A DNA stretch of 63,468 nucleotides, counting the filler, from Reticulomyxa filosa (lineage: Eukaryota > Protista > Foraminifera), in the NCBI GenBank assembly GCA_000512085.1. It is 11 parts of 11 records of this genome, joined end to end, with 100 filler letters (N's around TTAATTAATTAA, not from the genome) between each part and the next. Parts side by side here need not be neighbours in the genome. Positions count along the whole stretch, not along the records: positions 46,842 to 62,368 come from ASPP01004662.1; 10 more parts are not named here. One strand, given 5' to 3'. Every line of letters begins with the position of its first letter. Position 1 is the stretch's first letter. Under the pieces are notes generated by a model, which was given only the letters and a program-made list of their open reading frames with translations, searched no databases and had not been told where the DNA came from. This document shows positions 50,106 to 61,855 of this stretch, piece by piece. A program made the translations under genes and the position numbers.

Positions 50106-51501
50106 ATGATCACTCTTAATGAAAAAGAAACTTCAATACAATTAGTTTGGTAATATTCATTCCAATATTTAGACTTTATCTCTTTCTCTTTAGTTGTTTT
50201 GACGCATTTCATGTGAATCAGTCAGAAAAAGAAGAAACTCAAATAATAATTCAATATTGGATTCGAATATTAAAGATTAAATTAGGATGGATCCATGAAT
50301 TTGACAAACTTGTTGTCAATTATGTTATGATTTTTTTGTTGTTTGTTTTTCATCTAAGATCAAGGTGTTATATTTATTTATTGTTATAATTAATAATCAC
50401 TATTTAACGCAGGCAACTACAGTATTCATGCTTGACACGTTTCGTTCATCATCTAAATTACTTAAAACATTCTCTGGACACACTGATTGTGTGTATAGTA
50501 TTGATTGCTTCACATTGGATTGTGATCAATTCATTTGTTCTGGATCAGATGATAAAACAGTTCGTGTATGGGATGTTGAGAACAACAAACAAATTCAATC
50601 ATTCAATGGACATTCAAGTTCTGTGTCTTGTGTGAAATTTTCTCCATATCACTGTCGCAATTATCGTCGTAATGTTATTTGTTCTGCATCACATGATAAA
50701 ACCATTCGCTTTTGGGATATCAAAGATAATCAACAATGGAAAATATGTAAAGAGCACACAAAGGGTGTTTGTGGAATTGAATTTTCACAATTTAATCGTG
50801 GTCGATATTTATGTTCTGCATCCGATGACAAAACAATTCGTTTATGGGATATTGAAACATACAAATCATTACATGTTTTCAATGGGCATGAATATGCTGT
50901 TTGGTGTATAGCTTTTTCATCATTGCAAAGCTATAATAATAAAAATAAGAATAATAGTATTGGAGTGATTGGTGGTAATGGATACACAATTTGTTCTGGA
51001 TCAAGTGATAGAACTATTCGTGTATGGGATATTGAAACAACTAAACAATTGATTGTATTCAAAGGACATAGAGATGCAGTAGTGAGTGTAAAGTATGGAT
51101 CAAACGAATTAGGAATTAATGGTGGCACAAATACAATATTATCAGGATCACAAGATAACAATGTTTGTTTGTGGGATATTCGTTCCAAGAAACAAACTCA
51201 AGTATTCAAAGGACATAGAAATGGTATAAATATTGTCGAATACTCATCATTTGTAATGGATAATAACGATATTGGTGATAGTTCCAATATAATATGTTCT
51301 GGATCAAGTGACAATACAATTCGATTTTGGGACATTCGATCAAACAAAGAATTGCATGTAATTAAAGAAAATAATGGAATACATTGTCTTACATTTTTAC
51401 AATTAAAGAAAGAAAAAAAAGGCAAATGTAAAGATGACCGTGATTGTGATATTTCTCTGTGTTATTGTTTGTCCAATGGCACTATTCACACTTGGGGATA
51501 A
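50106..51501 (+). CDS. WD40 repeat protein (7 blades) with conserved N-terminal helical motif; 3 exons
   Basis: MITLNEKETSIQL / SEKEETQIIIQYWIRILKIKLGWIHEFDKLVVNY / ATTVFMLDTFRSSSKLLKTFSGH..., then repeated GH...ICSGSxDxTIRxWD units ending IHTWG*. Confidence 0.93.
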
Positions 51502-51754
51502 TCTAATAAAAAAAATTGTTTACTTGATTTGACACTTTTTAAGTGAGTTCAATGAAGTAAATTTTTTTATTAATGACAAAATAATATATTTCAGGCATTT
51601 CTATTCCTCATTAAACGTTCTGTTTGAAAATATAGACTAGTTTTTAATTTTTTCTGGAGTGCATCCATTTTTAAAAATTATGTGGACCAGCTTTTTCTGC
51701 AATTTACGGACGCCTAAAATACCAGAGGTATTTTATCTTTCCAATTTAAGCAAA

Positions 51755-52160
51755 AGAATGTATCAATTGATGAAATGTGTACATCATTTAATTGTTATAA
51801 AAAATGAAAGCATTCAAAGATCTTCCAAAAATATTTATCATTGATACTTATCGTGGTGAAAATGCTCCAAAATCTTATGAAATTGTAATGTGAGGAGATG
51901 AGATATTATATGGGCATAACGACGATGGATTTTTGATCATTTGGTCAACTACTAAAGGACATCGGGTCGCTGACTTGTCATTATTGAGTGAATCTATGAA
52001 AGATATTGTATCGTCAAAATATAAATGCAGTTGTCCATTCAAGCAAATGTTGCAAGAAATTAGGACAGAAATCCGAAACAAGAAAAATAGTGAATGGTAT
52101 TGCGTGGAAAGTCAAGACACCACGGATTAGAACATCATTTTTCAACAAAAATCTATGTAA
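51755..52160 (+). pseudogene. 5'-truncated caspase-fold (peptidase C14) pseudogene, paralogue of the 56557-57539 domain
   Basis: VSIDEMCTSFNC(fs)MKAFKDLPKIFIIDTYRGENAPKSYEIVM*GDEILYGHNDDGFLIIWSTTKGH...EWYCVESQDTTD*NIIFQQKSM*. Catalytic Cys is replaced by Tyr; two premature stops and one frameshift. Confidence 0.88.
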
Positions 52161-52248
52161 AATTTTAATTTTTGTAATAAGTAAGTAGCATTTTTTTTTT
52201 TGGAATTAAATCACGCAAATCAATTTTTTATTGCTGAAAAAAATAAGG

Positions 52249-58100: not shown

Positions 58101-58759
58101 ATTTTTGTCCTTACTGATTTTTATTAATGGCATATGAAAGTTATTGTAACTTGTCGAAGTAATGTATTGAATGAAGATATTCAAAATTATTTTAATTAAA
58201 TCATACATCAATGATGTATCTTGACCATTTAAAATGAACAATGGAAGAAAGTAAAACAAAAAAAGATACCAACAAGGTCACTACTGGTTGTTTGTTTGTG
58301 TATCACTGTTCTTTTTATATTTATCCTACGCTTGTATTGCCACAAAAAGAAAATTGGAAACGATGACGGTCCTTTAGTGTAACTTACTTTATTCATTTTT
58401 CATTAATTTCTTTAAATAAATAACTCAAATTTTTACATATCAACTTATTCATGGTTAGTACTTCAATTTTAGGGACTTTTGGCCTTAATCAAATATAGAC
58501 AATGTAAGACAATAAATTGAAAGCCAGCCTTTGTTTGTTTATCAGCTGGAATTTTTGCGATTTGAAAACAGAAAAATGTTAAACTTTTCGCTCTATGGCC
58601 AGAATTCGCACGAAATTCTTGTTTTGGACAAGACAATAAGTGCTTACTGATAAAATGAAAATCATCAAAATGTAACATATGAAACAATTGTTACATTTGT
58701 AAAATAATAAGATCATTAATGCACAGATTTAATATTTTTTTAGAGTATTTTAAAATTTT

Positions 58760-60123
58760 AATGTGAAAGTTGGAAGCTGATGTAAATAAAATATTTAGCA
58801 TAGATGTTTCACCAGATGATAATACTATTGTATCATTGTAGTGATACTACTTACGCCACAATGGAGTCAGTATGACTCCAAATATACAAATTATTTCTTT
58901 TTAATTTAATTTCAAAAACATATTCTTACTTTTCTTAAAACGGGCTTTTCCGCTCCAGGTTCTCTACATCATGTTCAAATGAAATAATCAAAGTATGGGA
59001 TTGCATAATAAAGCGTCAAGCAATCAAAGTATAACAGAATGAAAGGAGTATATTTGTTTAATAATACACATAAACTCATTGCTTATTTATGTATTTGAAA
59101 GGTTACGATATTTTGTCAATGATAGCTGCGTTGATATTTTTTTTTTGATTTTTTTCTTGAGATCTTCTTAGATAATGAAATTTTGAACTTTTTAATATTG
59201 TGTTCAAAAAAATTCTGAGAAACAAATTGAACAACAAGTGAATTCTTTCAATAAAAAAAATGTTCAAAATTAAACAAGTTTTTTAATATTGAAGGAAAAC
59301 TATGCTACAAAAATTTTATTTTCAAAAATTTATTCCAGCATTATTTTTATTATTTTATCATTTTCTTTAACAATTTTGTTTTTTTCTTTTTGTTCAATGA
59401 CACAATCGATGCAATAAACTAGCATATAAAACTAATTTATTCAATGGACCAGAATTAGGTTAGTTAATAAATTACTCTTTTTCTTCCGAGCTGAATAGAA
59501 TATTTTGTTTCATCTGAATATTGCACAAATTTTGGAACATAATTACAATATACAAAAAATCAAATGATACACATATCTAAAGAATGCTTCTAATGCTCAT
59601 TGGCTTTTCATATTCATTCAAAATAAACAATATTTTATAGTGCAATTTTTTGTGTAAAATCCGAATATAAAAGAAAAAATCAATTTTGGAATGTCTGTAA
59701 TCAATAAAAGCGCATTTTTCATTAAGCTTACTTTTTCCATTCAGATAGGCTGTGCAAAAAAAAACAACGAAAGATGAAAAAAAGCGAAAAATAAAAAAAT
59801 TTGCCAGGAGAACCATTGGTGTCAACAATCCACAACAACAACATCACACCACATAAGATATACGCTTTCATAATTAAATTAATAAATAACAATAACACAG
59901 TTTATTACACAATCTATACATTGTGCTTTGTTGATTTTCGAAAACTTGTTTTCTAATAATTCTGCTTTCGTGACTAATTACAAATATAATGTTTATGACA
60001 TGCATTTGACAGTAGACCTAGCTCCATTAGTGAACGATGAAATGTCGTTTGTGGCATTGACTTATATCCTGATGGTTCAAAACTAGTTCATGTTCTAATG
60101 AAAACAATTTGATTATGTGGTAG
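58760..60123 (+). pseudogene. Scattered relics of a second WD40 subfamily (SPDG type)
   Basis: About 58770-58850 KIFSIDVSPDDNTIVS; about 58965-59005 TSCSNEIIKVWD; about 60050-60123 VCGIDLYPDGSKLV(fs)CSNE..I*LCG*. Confidence 0.5.
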
Positions 60124-60619
60124 TGATGACGGTAAATTGTTGATTTAACTGAGGATAATATTGTAGATTATATTTGGAAAGTAGGCAATCAAACTGGTTT
60201 ATCAATGAAAGGAAGTATTTGGAGAGATTCAAAGGTTTGGAACATAACAAAAAATTCTTGCGAAACAATGTGGTGGAGTATTTTGATGTTTTTGTTTTTT
60301 TACTTGTGTGAATAGAACTTGTTTTTTAAGTATTCTTATTAAATACAGTTATTCTAAGCAAAATAAAGTGTGACAGAAATTAACTGATTCTTGTTTTTCT
60401 TGAGATTATCTTAGATTATATAAGATAAAAATTCCTTGATAATGTGTCATATTGTCCTTTTCACTTTATACTGTTTTGAAGGTTCGATACAAAAAACAAT
60501 AGCAAATAGATAAAACACATTTCGATGCTTGCGTTCAATCAAATCAAACAAGTTTAATTTTCTTTTAATCAAACTTTTCAAACAAAGACAATTTCATTTT
60601 TTATTCAACAAAAAGGAAA

Positions 60620-61855
60620 TTATCCCCAAATACGAATGTGACCTTTCTCTGAACCATAATACAAATTCAAATCATATGTGACATTCTTTGTCTTATCTTT
60701 CTTTTTCAATTTAATAAATTTAAGACAAGTTATTCCGATATCTTCTTCTTTATCTCCTTCAATCACATACAACTCATTTTTATTTGATCGAATATCCCAA
60801 AAACGGATTGTATTATCCCATGATCCAGAACATATTACGCTTGAATTCTTTATTACAAATGGTGAATATTCAACAGCATACACCCAGTTATTGTGTCCAT
60901 TGAACACTTGAATTTGTTGACAAGATCGAATATCCCACAAACGAACACTGTTATCTGCAGATCCAGATAATATTGTATTCAATAATTCATTTGATCCATA
61001 TTTTGCACTATTCACATGACTGCCATGTCCTTTGAATACATTCAATTGTTTAGTTGTTTCAATATCCCATATTCGAATGGTATTATCATATGATCCAGAA
61101 CAAATCGTATATCCATTTCCACCAACCACACCAATATTATTAACTTTATTATTATTGTCATTGTTGTCATTGCTTTGTAATGGTGAAATATCAACACAAC
61201 AAATATAAGATTTATGTCCTCTGAAAACATGTAATGATTTTGATGTTTCAATATCCCATAAACGAATTGTTTTGTCCCATGATCCAGAACACAAATATCT
61301 ACCACCATTAAATGGTGAAAATTCAATACCACGAACATCACTAGTGTGTCCATTAAATGTTTGTAATTGCCCATTATGTTTGAAATTCCAAAAACGAATG
61401 ATTTTGTCATGTGATGAAAAACAAATGACATTTTGATGATGACTATGATAACAATATGATGAAAATTTTACACAACTGACATAACCTGAACTCATATTGA
61501 GTGATTGAATTTGTTTGTTGTTATCAACATCCCATATACGAACTGTGTTATCATATGACCCAGAACAAATGAATTGGCAATCATCAAATGTTGAATAATC
61601 AATACTATACACCCGATTAGTATGTCCAACTAATGTATTGATTAATTTGGATGATGAACGAAATGTGTCAAACATGAAGAAAGTAGACACCTATGTAAAT
61701 AGTATTGGAATATTTGATTGCCATTTAAAAAAAAAAGAACAAATGAACTAACATAATTGACAACGAGTTTGTCAAAATCTTCAATCCATCCTAATTTAAT
61801 GTTTAATGTTCGAATCCAATAATGAATAATTATTTGGGTTTCTTCTTCTGTTGAC
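60620..61855 (-). CDS. WD40 repeat protein (7 blades), third paralogue; first exon and start unresolved
   Basis: STEEETQIIIHYWIRTLNIKLGWIEDFDKLVVNY / VSTFFMFDTFRSSSKL... open through to HIRIWG*. Confidence 0.9.

What the first reader, a model, noticed from the sequence alone, without database searches (positions are those of the whole stretch)
50106..61855. Candidate protist immunity/allorecognition locus: diversified WD40 genes interleaved with caspase-fold effector genes
Seen: about 12 kb of one contig contains only three intact WD40 paralogues, relics of two WD40 subfamilies, one Kelch-caspase fusion and one caspase pseudogene, with no housekeeping gene between them. Established: birth-and-death clusters of repeat-domain sensors linked to death effectors are typical of NLR and fungal heterokaryon-incompatibility loci such as the Podospora HNWD genes het-e/het-d. 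Inference: in a syncytial organism whose pseudopodia fuse, this could be a NACHT/NB-ARC-free non-self recognition system in which beta-propellers sense and a caspase-like protease executes.
Basis: partly seen in the sequence, partly recalled or inferred. Interest (0 to 1): 0.85.

Follow-up and report, generated by a model that had tools for sequence, protein, structure and literature searches.

The report
Foraminiferan arms-race propeller and caspase families
This stretch of the giant freshwater amoeba Reticulomyxa filosa is not a special recognition locus but one of many patches of three huge gene families, whose binding surfaces evolve like immune receptors and one of which carries its own caspase-like protease, pointing to an undescribed protist defence repertoire.

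Summary
The piece is a 15,527-bp contig of Reticulomyxa filosa. The inventory is largely right: three WD40 genes, a Kelch-caspase gene (two one-base frameshifts, yet still under purifying selection), a caspase relic and two WD40 relics. The locus reading is not supported. The WD40 family has at least 538 members and the Kelch family at least 340, scattered among housekeeping genes. The three WD40 genes are not each other's close relatives. WD40 contigs carry caspases no more often than stand-alone Kelch genes (1/26 vs 3/63). 'NACHT-free' is wrong: one relic is a decayed NACHT-WD40 gene, and an intact-looking one exists elsewhere. What survives is strong. WD40 paralogues show positive selection (p about 1e-16) at the same top-face codons as fungal HET-E. 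Kelch domains are also positively selected, while the protease module is conserved. The fusion is a recurrent family: Kelch, helical domain, PB1-like beta-grasp, caspase fold with intact His-Cys and a non-Asp pocket. WD40 and stand-alone Kelch proteins share an unannotated 30-residue box. Best reading: dispersed, defence-type recognition families. Function, and allorecognition in particular, is untested.

The parts
50106..51501 (+). WD40 gene A; exons about 50106-50149, 50194-50323 (box motif), 50413-51501 (propeller)
   Evidence: Pfam WD40 E 3e-46; in-frame introns
50216..50323 (+). Shared ~30-residue box (I..W.R...I.LGWI.DFDK.V..Y) of gene A
   Evidence: Profile hit E 5e-22; found in 70/120 WD40 and 52/120 Kelch proteins
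51752..52185 (+). Caspase-fold relic, C-terminal part, catalytic Cys replaced by Tyr, two stops
   Evidence: tblastn 71-76% to the local caspase domain; DNA closer to L012 (84%) and L002 (81%) than to the local copy (76%)
52249..53627 (-). WD40 gene B with box exon (53394-53510)
   Evidence: Pfam WD40 E 3e-46; NCBI model P0286
54939..56050 (+). Kelch-type propeller of the Kelch-caspase gene; one-base frameshift in the A7 run at 55613-55619
   Evidence: Pfam Kelch hits; member of a family of at least 340
56274..56492 (+). Exon for a ~60-residue helical domain of unknown family (duplicated in some paralogues)
   Evidence: Alignment A5; helical in the model of a paralogue; no Pfam or PDB match
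56557..56820 (+). Beta-grasp domain, PB1/CIDE-N/ubiquitin-like
   Evidence: Model of paralogue P0002, pLDDT over 90; VIA Z 8.0 to MEKK3 PB1, 7.8 to Par6 PB1, 7.5 to CIDE-A
56821..57539 (+). Caspase-fold protease domain, His (CGHG) and Cys (DCCRG) intact; one-base frameshift in the T3 run at 57281-57283
   Evidence: Pfam PF00656 E 2e-14; Foldseek best hits caspase-8, -9, -3; branch dN/dS 0.14-0.19
57588..58120 (-). Decayed WD40 gene of the same family as A-C, interrupted by a dispersed repeat
   Evidence: tblastn E 1e-8 with stops
57871..58019 (+). Dispersed ~130-bp AT-rich repeat
   Evidence: 79-81% copies on L001 (two) and L010, 73% on L011
58117..60260 (+). Strongly decayed NACHT-WD40 (NLR-type) gene
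   Evidence: Colinear blastn matches to L010 NACHT part (E 3e-8), WD repeats (E 9e-8) and C-terminus
60620..61949 (-). WD40 gene C with box exon (61752-61860); start not resolved
   Evidence: Pfam WD40 E 1e-47; NCBI model P0181, partial

Best explanation
The stretch is one AT-rich patch in which copies of several dispersed, lineage-expanded Reticulomyxa families have accumulated and partly decayed. The families behave like recognition proteins in an arms race, most likely against ingested or intracellular microbes and viruses. Two separate machines are inferred. (1) The Kelch-caspase protein is a self-contained receptor: a variable Kelch propeller binds a ligand, the PB1-like beta-grasp domain drives oligomerisation, and the caspase-fold domain is activated by proximity and cuts after basic residues. 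(2) The stand-alone WD40 and Kelch proteins are interchangeable substrate receptors: a variable top face plus a constant 30-residue box that plugs into a common partner, as F-box or SOCS-box proteins do. Shown: family sizes, dispersal, domain order, fold, selection pattern. Inferred: ligand binding, oligomerisation, protease specificity, the partner of the box, and the defence role.
For: At least 538 WD40 and 340 Kelch relatives; every listed hit is R. filosa. WD40 M1a vs M2a LRT 71, omega 7-9.5 on 4% of codons under three frequency models; null simulations give at most 4.3. HNWD-equivalent codons have omega 1.8-2.6 against 0.23-0.36 elsewhere, and 6 of 8 selected sites fall on them (p 2e-6). 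Kelch: p about 1e-8, omega 9-10 on 5% of codons; beta-grasp plus caspase: omega 0.11-0.21, no selected class. Full-length fusions P0361, P0365, P0373, P0312, an intron-free 731-aa ORF from an environmental contig (P0068, L006) and a Kelch plus caspase-like protein in Nonionella stella. The same protease module also occurs behind TPR and TRAF zinc-finger domains. The box is on WD40 of two subfamilies and on stand-alone Kelch, and absent from Kelch-caspase genes. GC 28% in the patch against 40% in the neighbouring gene.
Against: No expression or functional data; no sequencing run was listed. Selection tests rest on 10 and 7 paralogues and a home-made codon model; gene conversion and multi-base changes can inflate omega. 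The box has no Pfam or PDB match, so the F-box/SOCS-box likeness is by eye only. The beta-grasp Z-scores (7-8) do not separate PB1 from CIDE-N or ubiquitin-like domains. TPR-caspase and zinc-finger-caspase proteins are gene predictions and may be mis-joined.
Confidence: 0.58

Rival explanations
1. One reading: a linked locus in which stand-alone WD40 sensors signal to the neighbouring caspase, as a NACHT-free allorecognition system.
For: 3 of 6 caspase loci have a WD40 gene nearby (L001, L003, L012); WD40 selection matches the HET-E pattern.
Against: Only 1 of 5 WD40-picked loci (73 kb) has any caspase sequence, a fragment. Contig sharing with WD40 is 1/26 for caspases and 3/63 for stand-alone Kelch, Fisher p 1.0 (small sample, contig length as proxy). 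The local WD40 genes rank 30th to 116th among each other's relatives. L001 shares DNA with the window, so it is not independent. NACHT-WD40 genes exist, one as a relic inside this locus.
Confidence: 0.08
2. The families serve self/non-self recognition between plasmodia or nuclei, but as a dispersed repertoire rather than a locus.
For: Foraminiferan reticulopodia branch and fuse (PMC2111848); the selected codons are those used by fungal allorecognition repeats (PMC1805685).
Against: Hundreds of paralogues in one genome fit pathogen recognition better than a few multi-allelic het-type loci (established pattern, my inference). No concerted evolution of repeats. No isolate data.
Confidence: 0.14
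3. Non-immune signalling or protein-turnover adaptors that diversified for endogenous partners (life cycle, cytoskeleton, membrane repair); the caspase-fold enzyme is a non-death processing protease.
For: Top-face residues are the general partner-binding sites of WD40 proteins (PMC3419727); PB1 domains are common signalling scaffolds; para- and metacaspases have non-death roles (established knowledge).
Against: Omega well above 1 with nearly every paralogue carrying a different residue, heavy pseudogene turnover and co-clustering with NACHT-WD40 and TPR genes are typical of conflict systems.
Confidence: 0.15
4. Neutral amplification of junk copies in a repeat-rich genome.
For: Many relics; star-like tree; dispersed repeat and a retroelement-like gene in the patches.
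Against: Strong purifying selection on frameworks (omega 0.1-0.4) and selection focused on predicted binding sites.
Confidence: 0.05

Closest known systems
Podospora anserina HNWD genes het-d / het-e (fungal NLRs; PMC1805685)
   Same: Positive selection on paired codons flanking two conserved WD40 residues on the top face; pseudogenes in the family.
   Different: The intact genes here have no NACHT and no HET domain; single propellers with position-specific blades (within-gene identity 44-52% over the conserved core) rather than homogenised repeats; hundreds of paralogues rather than ten.
Reticulomyxa caspase-like proteins (Klim et al. 2018, PMC5982838)
   Same: Same family; reported there to branch with animal caspases.
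   Different: The passages of that paper that mention Reticulomyxa give phylogeny only. The Kelch fusion, beta-grasp domain, non-Asp pocket and selection pattern were not found in the searchable literature.
Animal initiator caspases (caspase-8, -9) and paracaspase MALT1
   Same: Fold closest to caspase-8/-9/-3; His-Cys dyad; an N-terminal interaction domain.
   Different: Prodomain is beta-grasp, not CARD or DED; sensor fused in cis; Asp replaces the Gln of QACRG and the caspase-3 YSWR Arg has no counterpart, as in MALT1 and metacaspases (from knowledge).
Expanded F-box, SOCS-box and MATH-BTB ubiquitin-ligase adaptors of nematodes and plants (from knowledge)
   Same: Constant short box joined to a positively selected repeat domain, hundreds of copies, birth and death, clustering.
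   Different: The box here matches no F-box or SOCS-box model; it sits N-terminal on WD40 and C-terminal on Kelch.

Membership tests
HNWD / NLR (STAND) receptors | Central NACHT or NB-ARC domain | tested here: not met
   None in the WD40 or Kelch-caspase genes; present only in the relic 58117-60260 and in the L010 gene
HNWD / NLR (STAND) receptors | N-terminal cell-death effector (HET) on the WD40 protein | tested here: not met
   Only a 30-residue box precedes the propeller
HNWD / NLR (STAND) receptors | Near-identical repeats under concerted evolution | tested here: not met
   Within-gene blade identity mean 0.44-0.52, maximum 0.72
HNWD / NLR (STAND) receptors | Positive selection on four top-face codons per repeat | tested here: met
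   Omega 1.8-2.6, p below 1e-4 under three models
HNWD / NLR (STAND) receptors | Allelic variants cause cell death on non-self fusion | not testable with these tools
   One isolate, no reads
Caspases (C14A) | Caspase fold with His-Cys dyad | tested here: met
   PF00656; Foldseek E 1e-14 to caspase-8 for paralogue P0002; Cys kept in 85 of 98 motif matches
Caspases (C14A) | Asp-specific S1 pocket (Arg, Gln, Arg) | tested here: not met
   Gln replaced by Asp; the YSWR Arg aligns to a gap; the first Arg lies outside the aligned stretch
Caspases (C14A) | CARD or DED prodomain | tested here: not met
   Beta-grasp domain plus an unassigned helical domain
PB1 domain proteins | Beta-grasp fold closest to PB1 | tested here: inconclusive
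   Z 8.0 to PB1, but CIDE-N, FERM and ubiquitin-like domains within 1 Z; no Pfam PB1 hit
F-box / SOCS-box substrate receptors | Sequence match to F-box or SOCS-box models | tested here: not met
   No Pfam or PDB hit for alignment A4; no usable Atlas hit
F-box / SOCS-box substrate receptors | Constant box joined to variable, positively selected repeat domains | tested here: met
F-box / SOCS-box substrate receptors | Binding to Skp1 or Elongin C and a cullin | not testable with these tools
   Needs co-folding or pull-down

The most novel reading that the evidence does not exclude
Foraminifera have a large innate-immune repertoire of their own: single-chain receptors in which a diversifying Kelch propeller triggers a caspase-fold protease through a PB1-like polymerising domain, alongside about a thousand box-bearing WD40 and Kelch sensors and NACHT-WD40 NLRs. 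This would be a convergent inflammasome-like design in a multinucleate protist.
Probability: 0.4. Interest if true: 0.85.

Novelty: new variant of a known kind. Interest (0 to 1): 0.62.

Why it matters
How phagotrophic, multinucleate protists recognise invaders is largely open. Here hundreds of propeller genes show the selection signature of fungal recognition repeats, and a caspase-fold protease is wired to such a propeller through a different oligomerisation domain than in animals. Reticulomyxa can be cultured and the modules are small, so the model can be tested directly. It also bears on caspase evolution: these proteins are used as the outgroup of animal caspases, yet their pocket looks non-Asp-specific.

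Tried and rejected
Reads: none listed, so the frameshifts could not be checked and read laying was not used. The genome paper is not held; that the assembly used 454 reads prone to homopolymer errors is from memory. Local tandem duplication rejected (the formal one-clade test did not finish). A first fixed-site test used mis-indexed codons and was redone. Helical domain as SAM or death fold: no support. Box related to the helical domain: no. Box as F-box or SOCS-box: no hit. Locus-tag adjacency was not usable because most WD40 names lack tags; contig length served as proxy. The bacterial promoter scan is not meaningful here. Literature searches for Reticulomyxa with NACHT, WD40, Kelch or immunity found no description; subscription papers are not covered.
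Full report
Source. All 48 hits of the caspase domain are Reticulomyxa filosa proteins, and NCBI models of the window's genes lie on a contig of 15,527 bp, the length of the piece. The organism is a multinucleate freshwater foraminiferan (from knowledge).

Observation. Three WD40 genes are present, 60-62% identical, each with a short upstream exon joined by in-frame GT-AG introns. A caspase relic lacks its catalytic Cys and has stops. The Kelch-caspase gene runs from 54939 to 57539 with three introns and two one-base frameshifts, both in homopolymer runs. 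It has no in-frame stop otherwise, and its terminal branch has the same dN/dS as its paralogues (caspase module 0.14-0.19, Kelch 0.36-0.48, both below 1 at p < 0.01). It is therefore either intact and mis-assembled or lost very recently; no reads were listed to decide. The second relic is not a mere WD40 subfamily. It matches, in order, the NACHT part, the repeats and the C-terminus of a NACHT-WD40 gene on L010 (PF05729 E 9e-10), well above shuffles. The organism and this very stretch are thus not NACHT-free.

Is it a locus? The WD40 family has at least 538 near-full-length members, the Kelch family at least 340, the caspase family at least 48 in one length class and more with fusions. Five long contigs picked by a WD40 gene carry ordinary neighbours (SAGA-Tad1, adaptin, epimerase, PUB, dehydrogenase, S9 peptidase, RabGAP) and, in 73 kb, one caspase fragment, two Kelch relics, further WD40 copies and the NACHT-WD40 gene. 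Six contigs picked by a caspase have a WD40 gene in three cases, along with TPR, Kelch and NACHT-type fragments. With contig length as identity proxy, 1 of 26 caspase contigs and 3 of 63 stand-alone Kelch contigs share a sampled WD40 gene; the sample is small, but shows no caspase-specific link. The three local WD40 genes are not close relatives, and the caspase relic is closer to copies elsewhere than to its neighbour. The patch is AT-rich (28% GC against 40%) and shares 5' and upstream DNA with L001. These families cluster loosely with each other; the window is one dense example.

Selection. Across 120 WD40 paralogues, variability peaks at the residues three and five after the GH histidine and on both sides of the conserved Asp (mean entropy 2.9 against 0.8 bits). 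I equate these with the top-face binding positions R1-2, R1 and D-1 (PMC3419727) and with the paired codons under positive selection in Podospora HNWD repeats (PMC1805685). Codon models on 10 genes give M1a vs M2a LRT 71 and M8a vs M8 p 1e-13; 19 null simulations reach at most 4.3. The 24 pre-defined codons have omega 1.8-2.6 against 0.23-0.36, and the 18 hotspot codons 3.0-3.7. Seven Kelch genes give p 2e-8 to 3e-9; the beta-grasp plus caspase module of seven genes gives omega 0.11-0.21 and no selected class. Variable sensor and conserved effector within one gene family is the strongest evidence for a recognition role. Unlike HNWD, the blades are not homogenised.

Anatomy of the fusion. Paralogues with the full domain set exist (P0361, P0365, P0373, P0312), P0361 as a clean three-exon-type gene on L012. 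An intron-free 731-aa version comes from an environmental contig, and Nonionella stella has a Kelch plus caspase-like protein, so the design is not confined to one assembly. The order is Kelch, charged linker, ~60-residue helical domain, beta-grasp, protease. The model of paralogue P0002 (pLDDT 86) matches caspase-8, -9 and -3 best. The middle domain is a beta-grasp nearest PB1 and CIDE-N, both of which polymerise head to tail (established). His and Cys are kept, but Asp replaces the Gln of QACRG and the second pocket Arg has no counterpart, which suggests cleavage after basic residues as in para- and metacaspases (inference). The same module is predicted behind TPR and TRAF zinc-finger domains in R. 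filosa and with SAM, MATH or Ras domains in environmental relatives.

The box. A ~30-residue motif with invariant W, G and W is N-terminal in 70 of 120 WD40 proteins, C-terminal in 52 of 120 Kelch proteins, present in a second WD40 subfamily and in all three window genes, and absent from Kelch-caspase genes. It has no Pfam, PDB or Atlas match. Its spacing recalls F-box helix 1 or a SOCS/Cul box, from memory only. It implies that stand-alone propellers plug into a common partner, which need not be the caspase.

Comparison and verdict. Reticulomyxa caspases are known and group with animal caspases (PMC5982838). I found no description of the fusion architecture, the box, the NACHT-WD40 genes or the selection pattern, though subscription papers are not searched. 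The system works like fungal NLR repeats in its selection pattern and like expanded ubiquitin-ligase adaptors in its box-plus-variable-domain design, but is a member of neither by the tests made. The locus claim fails; the family-level finding is real and testable. Interest 0.62.

Noticed in passing
L010:3599-8737 (+): NLR-like gene: 481-aa upstream ORF with no Pfam hit (RelA/SpoT-like motif by eye), then NACHT and about 15 WD40 repeats in a 1231-aa open frame. No paper on Reticulomyxa NACHT proteins was found.
   Followed up: partly
window 57871-58019; L001:3386-3492 and 4511-4628; L010:13537-13682; L011:12055-12204: Dispersed ~130-bp AT-rich repeat with a short internal hairpin, next to or inside WD40 and Kelch relics; possibly a transposon end.
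   Followed up: partly
window 61616-62322 vs L001:12578-11665: 82-86% identical DNA covering the 5' end and upstream region of WD40 gene C; L001 also holds the closest caspase paralogue.
   Followed up: partly
window 46900-49543 (+): GC-richer, intron-rich gene with coiled-coil regions and a C-terminal domain without Pfam hit; unrelated to the patch.
   Followed up: partly
L002:4963-7678, L003:5888-5939, L004:5712-6641: Other Kelch-caspase copies also show frame changes or split gene calls, so annotation undercounts the fusion.
   Followed up: partly
P0323, P0333, P0344, P0369, P0409: Predicted Kelch-box-WD40 proteins with one box between two propellers.
   Followed up: no
L003:6981-9359 and L009:3521-5861: TRAF-type zinc finger joined to the same WD40 family; the same zinc-finger region occurs on caspase proteins P0070 and P0056.
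   Followed up: partly
L001:4721-6433 (-): Retroelement-like ORF fragments (by eye; no Pfam hit) between two copies of the dispersed repeat.
   Followed up: no
P0081: Hsp70-like region joined to the helical and beta-grasp domains; may be a mis-joined gene model.
   Followed up: no
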